Below are positions 878 through 14,448 of a stretch of 14,448 bases of DNA, one piece after another (within the stretch, counting starts at the first letter, position 1; the number at the start of each line of letters is the position of its first letter). This DNA is from Octopus sinensis. Its lineage: Eukaryota. Made by a program: the position numbers and the translations under genes. The notes beneath the pieces were generated by a model. That model was not told the origin of the DNA. It searched no databases and worked only from the letters and a program-made list of their open reading frames with translations. The stretch is from positions 1 through 14,448 of the forward strand of contig NW_021825803.1 of assembly GCF_006345805.1 (NCBI RefSeq), read 5' to 3'.

Positions 878-1477
878 CTACGTTCCTTCAAATGTAAATA
901 GGGTACCTACTTTATGAGGTACCTACTGAGTGTAGTTAACTCTGGCAGATCTGTTTGTGAGTTTCTCAAGGGGCTTAGTGTAAAAGGCGTGGTTTACTGA
1001 GCTGACAACACTTGTAAGTCTGTAGAACTTTCCACACTGAAAAATGGTTGGCATAAACTGTAAGCAGGATTTGTATCTGCATCTGGTGAAGATGTTGGAA
1101 ATGACTTTCAAGGATTTAAAGCTTTAATAGAAAAACAGAACATATAATAATCTGATTCCTTGAGCTCGTTAATTAACTAATCTTGCAGTAAAGGATCTTA
1201 CATTGAGAATGGATTAAAGTAATGCTGGGAAACGGATGAATGTAAATGAAGACGCAGCTTTTGTTCTTCCTTACACTGACTCAGAATTGTGCGGTGGTTG
1301 CAAGTCCACCAACAATTAACCAGTAGAGAAAACAGGGATGAAAAAAAGGAAGCGGTAGTCTCTGTTGATAGATGAATTCAATTGATTGGTGAAATACTAA
1401 TATAAAACACAGTTTTATGAGTGAACAAGAAATAATTGATGTTTACAACGAGGCAGGATAACCTAATCAAAGAAATC
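878..1477 (+). pseudogene. Degraded pogo/Tigger-family (Jerky/JRKL-like, DDE_1) transposase fragment, C-terminal part
   Basis: Frame +2, 878-1117, reads LRSFKCK*GTYFMRYLLSVVNSGRSVCEFLKGLSVKGVVY*ADNTCKSVELSTLKNGWHKL*AGFVSASGEDVGNDFQGF. As I recall the family, this follows the post-DQG segment of Jerky/TIGD transposases (LRSxKxKY...F...VN.G..V.EF.K...KDA.Y....W..V...TL..AWH.LW...DFEGF). Other frames continue the similarity (MNVNEDAAFVLPYTDSEL near 1237-1290; MSEQEIIDVY at 1417-1446). Stops at 899, 998 and 1061, plus frameshifts. Not in the ORF track. Confidence 0.7.
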
Positions 1478-1526
1478 TTCTTTTGAATTGGATCTCGACG
1501 TACATTTAAAACTAGTAATAATAGGC

Positions 1527-1736
1527 TCCAAAGTTTTGGCACAAGGTCAGCAAGATCTGGGAAAGGGCTAAGTCTATTACAGCGACCCCAGTGTTAAGCA
1601 GGTACCTATTTTCCTCGACTCCGAAAAGATGAAAGGCAAAGTCGGCCCAGGTAGGATTTGAACTCAGGACGTAAAGACGAACGAAATGCTGCTGAGCATT
1701 TTGCCTGATGTGCTAACGATTCAGCCAGCTCATCAC
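1527..1736 (-). mobile_element. tRNA-derived SINE, family A, old diverged copy
   Basis: Aligns by eye with 6484-6713 (taagtc.attaca.cgacccc...gatgaaaggcaaagtcg...atttgaactc...acgaaat...gtgct.acg.t.c.gccagctc). Minus-strand B-box-like gagttcaaat near 1656-1665. Confidence 0.8.
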
Positions 1737-1796
1737 GATTCGGTTCATCATCTTCTTTTTAAAAATAAAAGCTATAAATTAGAACAGATAAATAAT

Positions 1797-2004
1797 AATA
1801 TCGGGTTGAGAAACCATTTTGGATAGAAAAAGCCAAACGCCCCTCATGGGACTCGTAGCCAGATCTCCTGTAGACATGATAGGCGTTCTACAATTGTGGT
1901 AAAGCAATTTTTCGAACGCCAGTCATAACTACAGGGGATGCGGGTTCGAGTCCCACGGGCGGACTTCGAGTTTTCTGTCCCAAACGGTTTTTAAACCCAA
2001 TATT
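1797..2004. repeat. ~208-bp imperfect palindrome of two divergently oriented tRNA-like (Thr-like) units; MITE-like or twin-SINE-like
   Basis: Arm 1797-1888 versus reverse complement of 1914-2004: 28/34 identical in the outer block and 33/42 in the inner block. An inner stem aattg/caatt closes the loop tggtaaag. The right unit carries a canonical B box, GGTTCGAGTCC, at 1943-1953. Confidence 0.8.
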
Positions 2005-2302
2005 TCCGTGCCAAATTAAAAAGATTTATATGTACATCGAGATCCAATTCCAAAGAAGAATTCTTCCCCCGTTCTCTCAAATGCTTATAGATTATTATGA
2101 TGTCAGCAATAATCAAAGACAGGCCAAAATATATTCAATCTGCTCAACTTGCAAGATACGTTTAGAAAATAACCAAAATGGTATGGAACAGGATAGGAAT
2201 TATTTGAAAAGTTCCAATAAAAGGCTCCAACATTTGCTCGTTCATCTTAGACATTTTCCAAAATAAAGAAACAAAGAATCCTAACAGCTCTTCATCTCAA
2301 GA

Positions 2303-2632: not shown

Positions 2633-2785
2633 ATCCCCAAGACATGCAAATGTGCTTTAGTAGCAAATTCCAGCTCTTCACTTTGGAAAACTTTTCCGTG
2701 CAACTCGTTAAAATGTCACTTGAAAATGCTAATTAATGCTTCTTGTTTTCTTTTAATTAAAATTTCACTTAATTTTCATTTAATA

Positions 2786-2926
2786 TAAGGTTGTCTCAAA
2801 AGTTCGTAGAAAGTCTTGGAAAATAATGGTCTTTATTTTGAGGAATAATTTTTGTTGCTTTTGTTAGTACTTGGCGAGTAAAAATTCAATTTTCGCAAGT
2901 GTTTACGAACTTTTGGGACAACCTAA
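2786..2926. mobile_element. 141-bp mariner-type MITE
   Basis: 23-bp terminal inverted repeats: taaggttgtctcaaaagttcgta (2786-2808) versus tacgaacttttgggacaacctaa (2904-2926), 2 mismatches. TA dinucleotides at 2784-2785 and 2927-2928. TTAGGTTG...AAAAGT termini are typical of Hsmar1/MADE1-like mariners. No coding capacity. Confidence 0.85.
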
Positions 2927-3147
2927 TATTTCTTTTCTTTTCTTCTTTAAATTAAAATCACACTCCACTTAGATTTCATGTTGTCTTGTTCCTTTAGCAA
3001 CCAACTTGTACCGATTTTTGAGGGGTATTTTGAATTTGAGATAAAGGTGATGAGCTGTTGAGATGGTGTTTTCAAATTTATCACTCTGTAATCCGACAAA
3101 ATCACTAATCCAGTATCACTCTCCTGCCGGATTAGTGATGCTCCACT

Positions 3148-3182
3148 TATACACACACACACGCCACACACACACACACACA

Positions 3183-3226
<44 letters not shown>

Positions 3227-3278
3227 TCACACACACACCACACATATTTACTCATATATATATATATATGTATGTATT
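3148..3278. repeat. (CA)n/(TA)n microsatellite
   Basis: Direct dinucleotide runs. Confidence 0.95.
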
Positions 3279-3315
3279 ATGTATGTATGTGTGCAAGTAT
3301 GCATCTATCTATCTA

Positions 3316-3353
<38 letters not shown>

Positions 3354-3384
3354 CATCAATCCATCCATCCATCCATCCATCCAT

Positions 3385-3422
<38 letters not shown>

Positions 3423-3442
3423 ATCCATGTATGTATGCATGC

Positions 3443-3518
<76 letters not shown>

Positions 3519-3640
3519 GTCCGTCTGTTTGCCTGTCTGTCCGTCCATCCATCCCTCCCTCCCTCCCTCCCTCCCTCCCTATGTATGAATGTTTGCACGT
3601 ATCTATCTATCTACCTACCTATCTATCTATCTGTGTGTCT
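3279..3640. repeat. Compound tetranucleotide microsatellite (ATGT, CTAT, CTGT, CCAT, CCCT, CTAC)
   Basis: Consecutive tetranucleotide blocks visible directly. Confidence 0.95.
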
Positions 3641-3650
3641 TTCTATTACC

Positions 3651-3855
3651 TACACACGCGCGCACACAGACACACACACACACGCACACATACATACACA
3701 CGCACACACACACACACACACGCACACGCACATACACACGCACGCACACGCACATACACACGCACACACACATACACACACACACACACACATACACACA
3801 CACACACACATACATACACACGCACACACACACACACACACGCACACGCACACAC

Positions 3856-3892
<37 letters not shown>

Positions 3893-3904
3893 TGCACACA
3901 CACA
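3651..3904. repeat. Interrupted (CA)n microsatellite with CG/TA variants
   Basis: Direct dinucleotide runs. Confidence 0.95.
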
Positions 3905-3942
3905 TGTTAGGTGCGTGAAGGTGTTGGTCTTTGAGATAGCAT

Positions 3943-4053
3943 GGTGCACAGATTGTTTTCACTGGAAGTCTTCCAGGAATCGACCAAGAGAGCGGCAGAG
4001 ATGATCGCTTCATTAGTTTCAAAGAACCAATTTAGCTCAGATTGACAAAGAGA
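3943..4053 (+). repeat. Dispersed ~110-bp module Y, copy 1 (direct repeat of 5263-5372)
   Basis: Shares these blocks with 5263-5372: ggtgcacagattgttt, ctggaagNcttccagg, aatcgacc, atgatcgcttcattagttt, aaagaa.caattta, attgacaaagagata. Confidence 0.9.
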
Positions 4054-4117
4054 TAAAAAAAAAACCCAGAAAAATATGGGTTACATAGGCAGACAATCGC
4101 ATATATAGGTACATAAA

Positions 4118-4119
4118 TA

Positions 4120-4185
<66 letters not shown>

Positions 4186-4975
4186 CATACACACACAGAC
4201 AAACACACAGACAAACACATACACACACAGACAAACACACACACAAACACACACAAACACACACACACACACAAATACACACACACATACACACACACAA
4301 ACACACATACACACACAAACACACACACAGACAAACACATACACACACAGACAAACACAGACACAACACACACAAACACACACCACAAACACACACACCA
4401 CACAAACACCACTACACACACACAAACACACACCAGACAAACACATACAAACACAGACAACACACACCCCAACACACCAAACACACACACAAACACACAC
4501 ACCCCACACACAAACACACACAAACACACACACAGACAACACATACACACACCAGACACCACACACAACACAACACAAACACACACACACACACACAACA
4601 ACACCACAAACACCACACACCCACAAACACGCACACACACCAACACACACACACACACACACACACACAACACTACACCCACGCACGCACACACACACCA
4701 CCACACAAACACACACACAAACACACACACATACATACACACACACAAACACACACACAAACACACACAAACACACACACAAATATATATATATATGAAT
4801 GCATGTATGTATGTATATATAAGTCTGAAAACACACACACACACACAAACACACACACATATACACACACACACACAGACACACAAACACACACACACAC
4901 ACACACACACAAATATATATATATATGAATGCATGTATGTATATATATATATAAGTCTGTATACGTACACACAGA
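4118..4975. repeat. Long degenerate (CA)n array with CAAA/CAGA/CCA interruptions and a terminal local duplication
   Basis: Direct inspection. The block aaatatatatatatatgaatgcatgtatgtat...aagtctg occurs at 4781-4827 and 4911-4959. Confidence 0.95.
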
Positions 4976-5010
4976 CATTTTATCTTTAGTTGTGTCTACA
5001 AAACATTTAC

Positions 5011-5090
5011 AAATCATTCGGGGTTTTTTAATCTCGTTGTTTGCTCTTTCACGTATTTAACAATAGATGTTGTCCTTCGTTCCCTTCATC
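5011..5090 (+). repeat. Dispersed module X, copy 2
   Basis: See 688-764; the 28-bp exact core is at 5037-5064. Confidence 0.85.
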
Positions 5091-5262
5091 TTTTTTTTCT
5101 TCTTCCTGTTTTATTTATTTATTTATTATTTATTTTTTTTTGTTTTTTTTCGTTCCTTCACCTTCGCTTTATTAACGTCCAGGGGTGCTGGCTTGCATTT
5201 TATGGGAGCGCGCGAGCGCGGCAGAGCGCACATGCGAAGGTATCAGCAACTTTGGTTTGCAA

Positions 5263-5372
5263 GGTGCACAGATTGTTTGGCTGGAAGCCTTCCAGGGAAT
5301 CGACCCAATGGTTGCAGATGATCGCTTCATTAGTTTTAAAGAAGCAATTTAACATACATTGACAAAGAGATA
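5263..5372 (+). repeat. Dispersed module Y, copy 2
   Basis: See 3943-4053. Confidence 0.9.
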
Positions 5373-5404
5373 GATAAAGGCATAGATAGGCAAACGCAGA
5401 CATT

Positions 5405-5416
5405 ACACACACATGC

Positions 5417-5482
<66 letters not shown>

Positions 5483-5598
5483 TATATATATATTATATAT
5501 ATATATATATATACACATACATACATATATGTATGTATATATATGTAAGTATATATATATACACACACATCATACATATATGTATGTATATGTGTAAG

Positions 5599-5630
<32 letters not shown>

Positions 5631-5886
5631 CATGCATATATGTATGTATATTGTAAGTAATATATATATATAATATAATATATATATATATATACACACA
5701 CATACATACATATATGTATAATATGTGTAAGTATATATATATATATATATTATAACACACACCATACATACATATATGTATGTATATATGTAAGTATAAT
5801 ATATATATATGCATGTATATATATCTGCATGTTTATATATATAGACGTAGATATATATGTGTAGTGTGTGGATAGATATACATGTA

Positions 5887-5925
<39 letters not shown>

Positions 5926-5945
5926 ATATATGCATATATATATAT
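5405..5945. repeat. (TA)n-dominated compound microsatellite with a higher-order unit
   Basis: (TA)n runs separated by five recurrences of cata(c)atatatgtat...tgtaagta. Confidence 0.95.
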
Positions 5946-6483
5946 CTGAATGAGTGATAGTCAAATACGGACACAAATGCAAATACAACACACACAACCA
6001 CACACACACACACACACGCACACACACACATCCATACACATAATAAAATTTAAAAAAAACGGAGAAAAAAGACAAGAAAAAACAACAACAACAACAGGCG
6101 CGGACGTAGTACATGCAGGTACTAATGAGACGCTCCGAGAAGGAAAGAAAGAAAGAGTGGTTGTTTTGCGTTTCGTGCAAAGCTCTTCTTCGGAAACAGG
6201 AGACATTATAAAATCTGAGAGAAAAAGATGAAGGAGGAAGAAAAATCGCCAGCAGTAACGCAAACACAAACCTGCACACATACATATATTCATACAGAAA
6301 CACACACAAATATACGTGTAGAGACGCATACACAGGCACACATCACAAATCCACCATAATTTACGAACTAGCCATTGCTTAAGACAATAATTCTAAAGCC
6401 CCTAAAACCCTTATACAATGAAACTAATAACGAAATGAAAAAAATATATATAACTTCCATCTCGATCTAATAAAAATATATTT

Positions 6484-6713
6484 ATTTCCTACCCACAAGG
6501 GGCTAAACACAGAGAAGACAAACAAGGACAGACAAACGGATTAAGTCGATTACATCGACCCCCAGTGCGTAACTGGTACTTAATTTATCGAACCCCGGAA
6601 GGATGAAAGGCAAAGTCGACCTCGGCGGAATTTGAACTCGGAACGTAACGGCAGACGAAATACGGCAACGCACTTCGCCCGGCGTGCTGACGTTTCTGCC
6701 AGCTCGCCGCCTT
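6484..6713 (-). mobile_element. tRNA-derived SINE, family A, well-preserved copy
   Basis: The minus strand begins aaggcggcgagctggcagaaacgtcagcacgccgggcgaa (A-box-like) and carries a B-box-like ccgagttcaaattcc. The body continues gtcgactttgcctttcatccttccgggg and the tail ends at tgtgggtaggaaa. Homologous to 1527-1736. Resembles the octopus tRNA-derived SINEs as I recall them; subfamily not assigned. Confidence 0.85.
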
Positions 6714-6800
6714 ATAAAATAGACCTTATAAAAATAGACCTTATAATTGACAGCTGGTAATTGACACATTTGTCAAATGTGAAACACGGCTGTCTGTTAA

Positions 6801-6968: not shown

Positions 6969-7211
6969 TGTAAACCTGAAGATTGCGAAAGCATGAAAGT
7001 ACTTGTATTAGTGACAAGGTTACAAAAGCAACGAAAATTTTAGAATATACATGTGTGTGTGTGTGTGTGTGTGTAAATAATAAATGAGTGGAAATTGAAC
7101 CGGTGAGTGTGTTAGATATTAAGATTTGTATCATTCAAATATAGAATATTGTAAAATTGTAAAAAATACAAAAATAAAACATGAATTTCAGACAATGTAT
7201 TGGAATATAAT

Positions 7212-7214
7212 ATG

Positions 7215-7285
<71 letters not shown>

Positions 7286-7365
7286 AATGTGTGTGTGTGT
7301 GTTGAATGTATATATATATATGTATATATATATGAATGTATGTATGTGTGTATATGTATGTTGGC

Positions 7366-7426
<61 letters not shown>
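7212..7426. repeat. (TA)n/(TG)n compound microsatellite
   Basis: Direct inspection. Confidence 0.95.
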
Positions 7427-7887: not shown

Positions 7888-8111
7888 TCTTTATCTTTTC
7901 TTTTATCTTTTACTTGTTTCAGTCATTTGACTGCGGCCATGCTGGAGCACCGCCTTTAATCGAGCAACTCGACCCCGGTACTTATTATTTTTGTAAGCCC
8001 AGTACTTATTCTATCGGTCTCTTTTGCCGAATCGCTAAGTGACGGGGACATAAACACACCAGCATCGGCTGTCAAGCAATGCTAGGGGGACAAACACAGA
8101 CACACAAACCA

Positions 8112-8177
<66 letters not shown>

Positions 8178-8345
8178 AATATACACGACGGGCTTCTTTC
8201 AGTTTCCGTCTACCAAATCCACTCACAAGGCATTGGTCGGCCCGGGGCTATAGCAGAAGACACTTGCCCAAGATGCCACGCAGTGGGACTGAACCCGGAA
8301 CCATGTGGTTTGTAAACAAGCTACTTACCACACAGCCACTCCTGC
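7888..8345 (-). mobile_element. Full-length tRNA-derived SINE, family C, with an internal (TA)n(TG)n tract
   Basis: Minus strand: gcaggagtggctgtgtggtaag (A-box-like), ccgggttcagtccc (B-box-like, 8285-8298), gtggcatcttgggcaagtgtcttc (CORE-like), ggatttggtagacggaaactgaaagaagcccgtcg, a microsatellite, the 3' body, then an aaaagata-type tail. Colinear with 8449-8950. Confidence 0.88.
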
Positions 8346-8448
8346 ATATATGCATACAAAAATAAACTTACTATCCGGATTTACCTGAAGACCTCATAAT
8401 CGAATTAATCTATACCGTGAGGATGGCGGCTGAATATTTACCTATCTT

Positions 8449-8588
8449 TAGGTGTGGCTGTGTGGTAAGGATCTTGCTTCTAATTACGTGGGATCGAGTT
8501 CAGTCCCAATGCATGGCACCTAGGGAAAGTATCTTCTACTATAGCCCTCTTAGTGGATTTGGTAGATGGAAACTCAAAAAAGCCCGTC

Positions 8589-8628
<40 letters not shown>

Positions 8629-10370: not shown

Positions 10371-10480
10371 ATGTTTATATATATATGTTTATTTATATAT
10401 ATATATATATATATAATATATATATATATATGTATTATATATGTATATATGTATATATATATACACACATACATATACAT
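10371..10480. repeat. (TA)n microsatellite
   Basis: Direct inspection. Confidence 0.9.
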
Positions 10481-10756
10481 AAACTTAGTTGGAAATGGAT
10501 GCGTATCATTCAATCAAATGATGATACATTATTTGATTGAACACTACGCATCCATTTCTTACTAAGTTTATCTTAATCTTTTTGATGCGACTCTACTCTA
10601 TACTGTTTTTTCCCTCTCGTTTTTCTCTTATCCTTTCACTAATTCCCTTTTTTCTTCTCTTCATCGTTTTCTGTTTCTCTTACCCCTTCTTTCTCCTTTA
10701 CTCTCTCGCTCTCTCGTTGCTTATACGTGACCATCTTCCATCTTTCTTTTCCTCAC

Positions 10757-11275: not shown

Positions 11276-11318
<43 letters not shown>

Positions 11319-11540
11319 ATATATACATACATACATACATACATACATAATACATACTACATACATACATACATACATACATACATACACACATATATAT
11401 ACATACATATATATTTGTATATATATATATATATTATATATATATATATATATATCCAAATATATATATATGTATATGCATATATATTATATATAATATT
11501 ATATATTATATATATATAATATATATTATATTTATATATG
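11275..11540. repeat. (TA)n/(CATA)n compound microsatellite
   Basis: Direct inspection. Confidence 0.95.
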
Positions 11541-12019: not shown

Positions 12020-12463
12020 TTGCATGTGTCTGTACATCTGTATCTCTTTGTATCAGTATGTGTGAGTGCGTGTTTGTATGTGTGGTGTGTGTATCTGTGT
12101 GTAGTTTGCTTTTGTCTGTCTATGTATTTGTGTATATATGTGTGGTGTATATGTGTGTGTATGTCTGTGTGTGTGCGTTTGTGCTTCTTTGTCCGTGTGT
12201 ATCTGTGGTCTGTGTGTTTGTTTTTGTGTATATGTCTGTGTGGGTGTATGAGCGTGTGAGTGTGTGTGAGTGTGTGTGTGTGTGTGTGCGTATGTTTCTT
12301 TTATTAGTCTTTCTCTGTGAGTATATGTGTGATAGATTTCTGCTGTGTGTGTGTGAACGTGTATGTGTGAGTGTTTGTGTGTGTGAGTCTTTGTTCCTAT
12401 GTCTATATGTATCTGTAATATGTGTGTGTACTTCTCTAAGTATTTGTGTGTATATGTGTGTGT

Positions 12464-12511
<48 letters not shown>

Positions 12512-13060: not shown

Positions 13061-13329
13061 GTACTACACCAAAAAGAAAAAAAAAAAAGGAAGAAAAAAA
13101 ACGAGAACAGAGACAGTGGAACACAGTTTAATAACGACTCTCCTCTGTTTCCTGAATAACGGGTACGAGTGATCCCATCCGTGAAGGTTAGCGCAAAAAA
13201 CGAACTGCATCACTTTCACTTTTCATTCCTTCTTTCATTTATAATTCTTTCATTATTTTCATTCATTTATACTTTTATCCATCCATTCCGTTCGTTGTTT
13301 TTCTTTATTCAATTATTTCATCTTTTTAA

Positions 13330-14448
13330 TTCTTTCGTTCGTTTATTCTTTTTTTATTATTTCTATATTCTCTTATTCTTTCACTTAGTTTTCATTCCTT
13401 TATTCTTTCATTCTCCCATTCTTTCGTTCGTTTATTCTTTTTTTATTTCTATATTCTCTTATTCTTTCACTTAGTTTTCATTCCTTTATTCTTTCATTCA
13501 CTCATTCTTTCATTCATATCCATTCATTCTTTCATTCATACGTTCTCTTATTCTTTCACTTAGTTTTCATTCCTTTATTCTTTCATTCTCCCATTCTTTC
13601 GTTCGTTTATTCTTTTTTTTATTTCTATATTCTCTTATTCTTTCACTTAGTTTTCATTCCTTTATTCTTTCATTCTCCCATTCTTTCGTTCGTTTATTCT
13701 TTTTTTATTTCTATATTCTCTTATTCTTTCATTCTCCCATTCCTTCATTCGTTTATTCTTTTTATTATTTCTATATTCTCTTATTCTTTCACTTAGTTTT
13801 CATTCCTTTATTCTTTCATTCTCCCATTCTTTCGTTCGTTTATTCTTTTTTTATCATTTCTATATTCTCTTATTCTTTCACTTAGTTTTCATTCCTTTAT
13901 TCTTTCATTCTCCCTTTCTTTCGTTCGTTTATTCTTTTTTTATTATTTCTATATTCTCTTATTCTTTCACTTAGTTTTCATTCCTTTATTCTTTCATTCT
14001 CCCTTTCTTTCGTTCGTTTATTCTTTTTTTATTATTTCTATATTCTCTTATTCTTTCACTTAGTTTTCACTCCTTTATTCTTTCATTCTCCCATTCTTTC
14101 GTTCGTTTATTCTTTTTTTATTATTTCTATATTCTCTTATTCTTTCACTTAGTTTTCACTCCTTTATTCTTTCATTCTCCCATTCTTTCGTTCGTTTATT
14201 CTTTTTTTTATTTCTATATTCTCTTATTCTTTCACTTAGTTTTCATTCCTTTATTCTTTCATTTTCCCATTCTTTCGTTCGTTTATTCTTTTTTTTATTT
14301 CTATATTCTCTTATTCTTTCACTTATTCACTTTATTCTTTCATTCTCCCATTCTTTCGTTCGTTTATTCTCTTTTTTATTTCTATATTCTCTTATTCTTT
14401 CACTTAGTTTTCATTCCTTTATTCTTTCATTCTCCCATTCTTTCGTTT
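13330..14448. repeat. 86-89-bp pyrimidine-rich minisatellite, about 13 units, runs off the window
   Basis: Unit: ttctatattctcttattctttcacttagttttcattcctttattctttcattctcccattctttcgttcgtttattc(t)n(att)at. Anchors at about 13361, 13447, 13623, 13709, 13769, 13858, 13947, 14036, 14125, 14212, 14299 and 14380, plus a variant unit near 13535. Degenerate related sequence extends back to ~13215. Confidence 0.97.

What the first reader, a model, noticed from the sequence alone, without database searches (positions are those of the whole stretch)
1797..2004. Palindrome of two back-to-back tRNA-Thr-like units: candidate bidirectional Pol III or MITE-like element
Seen: a ~92-bp arm pair about 80% identical in the alignable blocks, around a short central hairpin (aattg-tggtaaag-caatt). 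Read outward from the centre, each arm looks like the 3' two-thirds of a tRNA: gaacg, an anticodon-like arm (ccagt-cataact-acagg on +, cctat-catgtct-acagg on -, the latter with TGT = Thr at the anticodon position), a variable loop, then a T arm (gcggg-TTCGAGT-cccac on +, degenerate on -). About 45 nt of shared tail with T4-T5 runs follows. Established: metazoan tRNA-Thr contains gcgcctgtc...aaacaggagatc.tgggttcgaatccc; internal A/B boxes drive Pol III and T runs terminate it. Inference: this is neither an ordinary head-body-tail SINE nor a functional tRNA. It may be a foldback element whose inverted arms carry outward-facing Pol III promoters. It could give two divergent small RNAs, or one long hairpin (an ADAR or Dicer substrate) if read through. 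I cannot match it to a named family. No clear target-site duplication is visible.
Basis: partly seen in the sequence, partly recalled or inferred. Interest (0 to 1): 0.75.

Follow-up and report, generated by a model that had tools for sequence, protein, structure and literature searches.

The report
Decayed palindrome of tRNA-Thr-like repeat units
In repeat-rich non-coding octopus DNA, an old inverted duplication places two 5'-truncated tRNA-Thr-like units head to head; it is real and larger than reported, but it looks like inert decaying repeat DNA rather than a working Pol III unit.

Summary
The inverted repeat is real. Arms 1797-1893 and 1909-2004 share 71 of 97 positions (BLAST E 7e-23), and the fold is -99.8 kcal/mol (z -10.7).

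It is larger than reported. A second, concentric repeat (1470-1513 / 2022-2065, 39 of 44) belongs to the same roughly 350-bp palindrome. The left arm was later split by a dispersed SINE (1514-1739) with a candidate 7-bp target duplication.

The window's repeats match Octopus vulgaris DNA.

Both arms resemble the 3' two-thirds of tRNA-Thr(AGU). ARAGORN and the Rfam tRNA model find nothing. There is no A box on either strand. Only the right arm has a B box. Arm differences show CpG decay and no strand bias that would preserve an RNA hairpin.

So "two tRNA-Thr-like units in a palindrome" holds, and "outward Pol III promoters" does not.

No octopus genome could be searched beyond 24 kb. I therefore cannot say whether this is a one-off duplication, which I favour slightly, or a copy of a MITE-like family. 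Interest is low to moderate.

The parts
1470..1513 (.). Outer left arm of the palindrome
   Evidence: Pairs with 2065-2022 at 39 of 44 (88.6%), self-BLAST E 1.3e-9
1505..1511 (+). Candidate target-site duplication of the SINE insertion, copy 1 (TTTAAAA)
   Evidence: Exact 7-bp direct repeat with 1758-1764. It is AT-rich and not flush with the SINE head, so it is only a candidate.
1514..1739 (-). Dispersed tRNA-derived SINE inserted into the left arm; not part of the palindrome
   Evidence: Matches window 6480-6718 and three places in the O. vulgaris locus L017. A four-copy alignment defines the head GGCGAGCTGGC... and the tail ...CCTTGTGCC...TATTATTATTA. An A-box-like site lies at 1717-1727.
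1758..1764 (+). Candidate target-site duplication, copy 2 (TTTAAAA)
1765..1796 (.). Left spacer, AT-rich with (AAT)n; weakly homologous to the right spacer
   Evidence: Collinear alignment with 2005-2021; 62 of 5000 shuffles do as well
1797..1893 (-). Inner left arm (unit reads outward on the - strand)
   Evidence: 71 of 97 identical to the right arm; E 6.7e-23
1839..1890 (-). tRNA-Thr(AGU)-like segment of the left arm (about tRNA positions 21-72)
   Evidence: Local alignment score 22; 0 of 5000 shuffles reach it; best of 22 tRNAs.
1892..1909 (.). Central hairpin aattg-tggtaaag-caatt (turn of the palindrome)
   Evidence: Sequence. Not significantly like a tRNA D arm.
1909..2004 (+). Inner right arm (unit reads outward on the + strand)
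1917..1958 (+). tRNA-Thr(AGU)-like segment of the right arm (about tRNA positions 26-69)
   Evidence: Score 18.5; 0 of 5000 shuffles reach it. The T arm also matches the Rfam tRNA consensus, 8 of 3000 shuffles.
1943..1953 (+). Perfect B-box motif GGTTCGAGTCC, the only one in the element
2005..2021 (.). Right spacer
2022..2065 (.). Outer right arm of the palindrome

Best explanation
This is an inert, decaying palindrome of about 350 bp in non-coding Octopus DNA. It spans 1470-2065 once a later SINE insertion is taken out.

A stretch of at least 165 bp was copied in inverted orientation next to itself, leaving a 15-nt turn. That stretch held a 5'-truncated tRNA-Thr(AGU)-derived unit (a SINE-like retroposon fragment or tRNA pseudogene), about 45 nt of tail, and about 60 nt of further sequence. 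I lean to a DNA-level fold-back duplication at this locus, by template switch or hairpin repair. The two halves then diverged neutrally for tens of millions of years, and a SINE landed in the left arm.

Neither arm is a working Pol III gene. The 5' third of the tRNA, with its A box, is missing from both, and only one arm keeps a B box. The only thing the element 'does' is fold. As DNA it can extrude a cruciform. If a host transcript reads through it, the RNA forms a long imperfect stem.

Shown: the anatomy, the tRNA-Thr likeness, the lack of A boxes, the later SINE insertion, and the neutral-looking decay. Inferred: that the duplication happened once at this locus rather than in the founder of a repeat family.
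For: - Geometry. The two arms share the same inner end and stay similar to within a few bases of the centre. With the SINE and one TSD copy removed, the halves align collinearly over 181 columns with 125 identities, out to 1470/2065. The repeat therefore runs past the tRNA-like unit and its ATATT(ATT)n end into further sequence. This is what duplication of a genomic segment predicts.
- No target-site duplication at the outer ends (sequence).
- tRNA-derived SINEs make up 11.6% of the O. vulgaris genome (PMC13282606). Several lie in this window. A random duplicated segment therefore often contains one.
- Decay. There are 25 mismatches in the inner arms, 5 of them CpG transitions, and the right arm keeps 8 CpG against 4 in the left. 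G:U-compatible changes number 5 for + strand RNA and 7 for - strand RNA, with 13 unpairable. That gives no sign of selection for a hairpin.
- Not a gene. ARAGORN finds nothing. Rfam tRNA finds nothing at E<=10 on 241 nt. There is no A box, and one B box.
- Age. The Jukes-Cantor distance per arm is 0.06-0.16. With the calibration quoted in PMC13282606, this is roughly 17-44 My. The inserted SINE is itself old.
Against: - The outer 44 bp are better conserved (88.6%) than the inner arms (73%, or 77% without CpG transitions). That pattern is typical of terminal inverted repeats of a transposon family. A single duplication would be expected to give more even divergence.
- The inner repeat ends in T(C/T)GGGTT flanked by TA on both sides, which could be a Tc1/mariner-type end with a TA duplication.
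- Copy number in the genome could not be measured. Only 38 kb of octopus DNA was available.
- Most palindromes of a few hundred bp in animal genomes are copies of MITE families (my own knowledge).
Confidence: 0.45

Rival explanations
1. It is one old copy of a dispersed, non-autonomous fold-back or MITE-like DNA transposon family whose long inverted arms happen to carry a tRNA-Thr-derived segment. A transposase encoded elsewhere would have moved it by cut and paste, and it is now dead.
For: - Size (about 350 bp), no coding capacity, and a full-length palindrome with a short loop.
- The terminal 44 bp are better conserved than the interior.
- The genome is rich in TIR families and MITEs (PMC13282606).
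- A bona fide mariner-type MITE with a TA duplication lies 780 bp away and has a 99.3% identical copy in another O. vulgaris locus.
Against: - No target-site duplication at 1470/2065, and the ends (AAGAA...) fit no superfamily motif I know.
- No second copy in the window or in 24 kb of O. vulgaris DNA. This only bounds the family at roughly fewer than 2e5 copies.
- tRNA-derived interiors are not a usual feature of MITEs (my own knowledge).
Confidence: 0.3
2. Two nested elements. A roughly 200-bp fully palindromic Tc1/mariner-type MITE (1801-2000, TA duplications at 1799-1800 and 2001-2002) inserted into the loop of an older, unrelated element of about 165 bp with 44-bp inverted ends. A SINE also fell into that loop.
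For: - The inner repeat stops sharply at AATAT/ATATT, with TA on both sides.
- Its ends, T(C/T)GGGTT(G/T)A, resemble the TAAGGTTGTC end of the nearby mariner-type MITE.
- Inner and outer repeats differ in identity, 73% against 88.6%.
Against: - The spacers between inner and outer repeats align collinearly better than chance (62 of 5000 shuffles). That favours one continuous palindrome.
- TA next to an AT-rich palindromic end is weak evidence.
- The resemblance to mariner ends covers only about 8 bases.
Confidence: 0.1
3. The element is a working bidirectional Pol III unit or a hairpin-RNA gene. It would give two divergent small RNAs, or one long hairpin processed by Dicer or edited by ADAR, and would be kept by selection.
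For: - A perfect B box in the right arm.
- T runs 8-30 nt after each tRNA-like part.
- A strong predicted hairpin.
- Weak hits to long-hairpin miRNA models MIR2670 and MIR7526, at 34-35 bits.
- dsRNA from repeats is a common ADAR substrate across animals (PMC5625713).
Against: - No A box on either strand, and no B box in the left arm.
- tRNA finders report nothing.
- The miRNA hits are far below their gathering scores of 117 and 110, and reflect hairpin shape only.
- 27% of stem positions are mismatched, with no bias toward G:U in either strand.
- A SINE has disrupted the larger palindrome.
Confidence: 0.03
4. Two independent insertions of the same 5'-truncated SINE landed head to head by chance, like inverted Alu pairs.
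For: - SINEs are very dense here, and another head-to-head SINE pair lies at 8194-8340 / 8455-8590.
- The left arm ends in ATATTATTATT, like the (ATT)n tail of the neighbouring SINE family.
Against: - Both arms are truncated at the same point and are only 15 nt apart.
- The similarity continues through the centre and beyond the tails into the flanks.
- No target duplications are visible around either arm.
Confidence: 0.04

Closest known systems
tRNA-derived SINEs of octopus (Ohshima and Okada 1994, three tRNA-derived retroposon families, as cited in PMC10886601; SINEs are 11.6% of the O. vulgaris genome, PMC13282606)
   Same: Each arm has a tRNA-related part followed by a short unrelated body. 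The end is ATATT(ATT)n, like the TATTATTATTA tail of the SINE family found next to it.
   Different: - The 5' third of the tRNA, with its A box, is absent.
- T4-T5 runs lie inside the 'body'.
- The units form a symmetric palindrome instead of a single head-body-tail copy.
- No dispersed copy was found in the 38 kb available.
Palindromic MITEs such as human MADE1 (Hsmar1-derived, source of mir-548 hairpins), and the mariner-type MITE in this window at 2785-2927
   Same: Short, non-coding, almost fully self-complementary, and predicted to fold into a long hairpin. There are TA dinucleotides at the ends of the inner repeat.
   Different: - The true MITE here has sharp ends, a clear TA duplication in two different flanks, and a 99.3% identical second copy in only 24 kb of genome.
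- The finding has none of these.
- Its arms are tRNA-like rather than transposase-binding ends.
Inverted SINE pairs (for example inverted Alu pairs), the main ADAR substrates in animals
   Same: Two SINE-like units in opposite orientation would form dsRNA if transcribed (PMC5625713).
   Different: Those pairs arise from independent insertions with their own ends and spacers. Here the arms share a truncation point, a 15-nt spacer and flanking sequence, which points to one duplication event.
Twin SINE of Culex pipiens (two tRNA-related regions in one element; recalled from memory, not checked here)
   Same: Two tRNA-related units in one element.
   Different: Twin has the units in tandem, in the same orientation, with promoters. 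Here they are inverted and lack A boxes.

Membership tests
Functional tRNA gene | Complete cloverleaf recognised by tRNA finders | tested here: not met
   ARAGORN finds 0 genes. At an 80% threshold it gives 13 scattered calls, including a differently phased one at 1922-1998, which is noise. Rfam RF00005 gives no hit at E<=10, even on 241 nt. The same tool finds a real tRNA at 56.7 bits.
Functional tRNA gene / Pol III type-2 promoter | A box (TRGCNNAGTGG) 30-60 nt upstream of a B box (GGTTCGANNCC) | tested here: not met
   No A box with up to 2 mismatches in 1797-2004 on either strand. The B box is perfect at 1943-1953 only, and the left arm fails at up to 1 mismatch.
tRNA-derived SINE | tRNA-related 5' head | tested here: inconclusive
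   Only about tRNA positions 20-72 are present. Against the Rfam consensus only the right T arm matches, 8 of 3000 shuffles. The composite structural motif is not rarer than chance, with a mean of 0.49 per shuffled window.
tRNA-derived SINE | Many dispersed copies flanked by target-site duplications | not testable with these tools
   No copy elsewhere in the window or in 24 kb of O. vulgaris DNA. No octopus genome could be searched. The metagenome scan gave 16 chance matches of 22-26 bp (one extends to 35 bp).
MITE (miniature inverted-repeat transposable element) | Terminal inverted repeats, small size, no coding capacity | tested here: met
   Inverted repeats. The element is about 350 bp without the SINE. 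There are only short, stop-interrupted frames.
MITE | Target-site duplication of a fixed length at the ends | tested here: inconclusive
   None at the outer ends 1470/2065. TA (or AATAT) flanks the inner repeat, but it is part of the palindrome itself and lies in AT-rich DNA.
MITE | Family of similar copies at unrelated loci | not testable with these tools
   As above. For contrast, the MITE at 2785-2927 does have a 99.3% copy in L017.
miRNA / hairpin-RNA precursor families in Rfam | Score at or above the family's gathering threshold | tested here: not met
   MIR2670 scores 34.7 against 117. MIR7526 scores 34.5 against 110. The others score 17 bits or less.
Independent inverted SINE pair (inverted-Alu type) | Two separate insertions, each with its own ends | tested here: not met
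   Shared truncation point, a 15-nt spacer, and similarity that continues into the flanks.

The most novel reading that the evidence does not exclude
The palindrome is the founder type of a dispersed octopus family of fold-back elements whose arms derive from a tRNA-Thr gene. It would be either a tRNA-derived MITE moved by a DNA transposase, or a SINE that forms inverted dimers by reverse-transcriptase snap-back. Such a family would seed hairpin-forming dsRNA across a genome known for heavy A-to-I editing.
Probability: 0.12. Interest if true: 0.55.

Novelty: new member of a known kind. Interest (0 to 1): 0.27.

Why it matters
On present evidence it matters little. It is one more decayed repeat in a genome that is about two-thirds repeats.

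It does show how a tRNA-derived fragment can be turned by inverted duplication into a long hairpin-forming sequence. It also shows that a B-box-like motif and T runs can survive without making a Pol III gene.

If genome-wide searches showed a dispersed palindromic family, it would be an unusual tRNA-derived fold-back element. It would then be a possible source of dsRNA in cephalopods, where dsRNA-dependent editing is prominent.

Tried and rejected
- Metagenome scan with the arm pattern GAACGCCNNTCATNNCTACAGG. It gave 16 loci, all with matches confined to the pattern region (22-26 bp; one of 35 bp), so these are chance.
- Looking for other copies through spurious ORFs in the protein collection. 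A profile of both arm translations found nothing.
- A control with the abundant SINE's translation also found nothing. That route is therefore uninformative about copy number.
- Exact-protein look-up of the ORF at 2030-2266 found nothing on record.
- I first took ttggcacaagg (1537-1547) as part of the left arm pairing with 2007-2015. The four-copy SINE alignment showed it is the SINE's own 3' region, so I rejected that.
- I tested whether the centre (TTGTGGTAAAGC) is a remnant D arm, which would make the + strand unit a full tRNA. It is not significant.
- The Rfam tRNA model as a test of tRNA origin is negative for the arms. It is also negative for a bona fide SINE head, so it has low sensitivity here.
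- A structural motif count for anticodon hairpin plus T arm gave 1 real hit against 0.49 expected, which is not significant.
- Full-text search for the tRNA-Thr sequence, to check my typed reference, found no paper.
I did not pursue it, because the ORF list shows only low-complexity frames.
- Sampling octopus DNA through the rhodopsin locus gave only 24 kb.

Full report
**What is there**

The region 1797-2004 is a genuine imperfect palindrome.
- The repeat finder reports the outer 34 nt of each arm at 82%.
- BLASTN of the element against its own reverse complement gives 71.4% over 210 columns, E 6.7e-23.
- A global alignment of 1797-1893 (reverse complement) with 1909-2004 gives 71 of 97 identical, with 11 transitions, 14 transversions and one gap.
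- The turn is the small hairpin aattg-tggtaaag-caatt at 1892-1909.
- As RNA, the 208 nt fold at -99.8 kcal/mol against -52.4 +/- 4.4 for dinucleotide shuffles, z -10.7.

The one correction is that identity is nearer 73% than 80%.

**Where the window comes from**

The window has no credible coding ORF. It is full of microsatellites, a satellite and dispersed repeats.

It retrieved the annotated Octopus vulgaris rhodopsin (P0001, 96% identity) and its locus on chromosome OX597836.1 (L017, 24.3 kb).

The window's repeats recur there:
- 6480-6623 at 93%
- 6544-6707 at 86%
- 7906-8287 at 84%
- 2783-2928 at 99.3%

The window is therefore from O. vulgaris or a very close relative. A 2026 re-annotation puts repeats at 66% of that genome, with SINEs at 11.6% (PMC13282606). 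Octopus SINEs are classically tRNA-derived (Ohshima and Okada 1994, as cited in PMC10886601).

**The palindrome is larger than reported**

Self-comparison shows a second inverted pair, 1470-1513 / 2022-2065, at 39 of 44 identical.

On the right, this outer pair lies 17 bp beyond the inner arm. On the left it lies 283 bp away. Most of that gap is a SINE in minus orientation at 1514-1739.
- It matches 6480-6718 in the window and three places in L017.
- A four-copy alignment defines its head (GGCGAGCTGGC...) and its tail (...CCTTGTGCC...TATTATTATTA).
- An exact 7-bp direct repeat, TTTAAAA, at 1505-1511 and 1758-1764 is a candidate target duplication.

With 1512-1764 removed, the two halves align collinearly from the centre out to 1470/2065. 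There are 125 identities in 181 columns, or 162 ungapped. The spacers align better than chance, with 62 of 5000 shuffles doing as well. An earlier test, made before the SINE limits were known, gave 117 of 2000.

I read this as one palindrome of about 350 bp whose left arm was later hit by a SINE.

**Are the arms tRNA-like?**

Detectors say no.
- ARAGORN finds nothing. When relaxed to 80% it gives 13 scattered calls in 14 kb.
- The Rfam tRNA model gives no hit at E<=10 on the whole window or on 241 nt. Only a 13-nt T-loop match to tmRNA appears.
- The same test also misses the bona fide SINE head at 1540-1780, while it scores a real tRNA at 56.7 bits. It is therefore insensitive to decayed heads.
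- A composite structural motif (5-bp stem, 7-nt loop, 4-5 nt, then a 5-bp T stem around TTCRANY) occurs once, in the right arm. Shuffled windows give a mean of 0.49, and 36% of them have at least one. The structure alone is not beyond chance.

Sequence similarity says yes.
- The alignments cover about tRNA positions 20-72.
- 0 of 600 shuffles reached the observed best-of-22 score, and 0 of 5000 reached it against Thr alone.
- The window's known SINE heads do worse by the same test, with 2-12 of 600 shuffles reaching their scores.
- This evidence is a lead rather than a proof, because the references came from memory.
- Against the tool-derived Rfam consensus, only the right arm's T arm stands out (15 nt; 8 of 3000 shuffles). 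The left arm does not.
- I could not verify the tRNA-Thr sequence in the literature.
- The centre is not recognisably a D arm.

**Is it a Pol III unit?**

No.
- A type-2 promoter needs an A box and a B box.
- No A box with up to 2 mismatches lies in 1797-2004 on either strand. The SINE heads at 1717-1727, 8328-8338 and 8455-8465 do have one.
- A B box is present only at 1943-1953. The left arm fails at up to 1 mismatch.
- T runs follow each tRNA-like part, but this is AT-rich DNA.

**Is the hairpin under selection?**

There is no sign of it.
- Of 25 inner-arm differences, 5 would still pair as G:U in + strand RNA, 7 in - strand RNA, and 13 in neither.
- Five differences are CpG transitions. 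The right arm keeps 8 CpG against 4 in the left. This is the pattern of neutral decay.
- Jukes-Cantor distance per arm is 0.16 for the inner pair, 0.06 for the outer pair and 0.14 overall. With the calibration quoted in PMC13282606 (0.09 at 25 My, 0.2 at 56 My), this is roughly 17-44 My.
- The inserted SINE is itself strongly diverged from a crude consensus.
- Rfam hits to plant long-hairpin miRNA families score 34-35 bits against thresholds of 110-117. They only reflect the hairpin shape.

**What it most likely is**

The arms share one truncation point, a 15-nt spacer, and similarity that runs past the ATATT(ATT)n end into further sequence. Two independent insertions are therefore unlikely. 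That leaves two readings.

(a) A DNA-level inverted duplication at this locus, of a segment that held a 5'-truncated tRNA-Thr-derived unit plus its flank.
- No target duplication is visible at 1470/2065.
- SINE-like content is what a random octopus segment often holds.

(b) A copy of a palindromic MITE or fold-back family.
- The better-conserved terminal 44 bp fit this.
- So do the TA-flanked T(C/T)GGGTT ends of the inner repeat.

A true mariner-type MITE at 2785-2927 shows what a family member looks like here. It has sharp ends, TA duplications in two different flanks, and a 99.3% identical copy within only 24 kb of genome. The finding shows none of these.

I lean to (a) at 0.45 against about 0.4 for the MITE readings together. 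The deciding datum is copy number and the shape of other copies in an octopus assembly, which was out of reach. The 38 kb available only exclude a family of more than roughly 2e5 copies.

**Verdict**

'Palindrome of two tRNA-Thr-like units' stands. 'Bidirectional Pol III' is not supported. 'MITE-like' remains open.

This is an ordinary kind of object, a decayed inverted repeat built from tRNA-derived repeat DNA, in a repeat-rich genome.

Noticed in passing
window 2785-2927: A young mariner-type (Stowaway/MADE1-like) MITE. It has 27-nt inverted ends, TAAGGTTGTC(T/C)CAAAAGTTCGTA, and TA duplications. A 99.3% identical copy sits inside the O. vulgaris rhodopsin gene range (L017 12255-12400) with different flanks. 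There is a weak Rfam mir-548-like hit at 2784-2928.
   Followed up: partly
window 10479-10571: A 93-bp near-perfect palindrome (84%), TAAACTTAGTTGGAAATGGATGCGTA..., set between a TA microsatellite and T-rich DNA. It looks like another small MITE.
   Followed up: no
window 8163-8612; also L017 19342-19750 / 20158-20538: Two copies of a second SINE family lie head to head about 115 bp apart (8194-8340 minus, 8455-8590 plus), with (TA)n tails outward. This is the same geometry as the finding, but with full heads carrying A-box-like sites. In the O. vulgaris locus the same family forms a tail-to-tail pair. Close inverted SINE pairs seem common in this genome.
   Followed up: partly
window 13210-14447: A satellite with an 89-bp unit (8.3 copies at 95% in 13721-14447; older copies start at about 13210). 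It runs off the end of the window.
   Followed up: no
window 3000-6000, 7200-7400, 11277-11539, 12059-12510: Very long, degenerate microsatellites: (AC)n of about 800 bp, (AT)n of about 530 bp, (ATCT)n and (TG)n. They produce long spurious ORFs and many false miRNA-model hits (mir-297, mir-3149, mir-466).
   Followed up: no
window 1514-1739 and 6480-6718: Two copies of one tRNA-derived SINE family, 75% alike. The Rfam tRNA model does not detect either head, which shows how weak covariance-model tests are for decayed SINE heads.
   Followed up: yes
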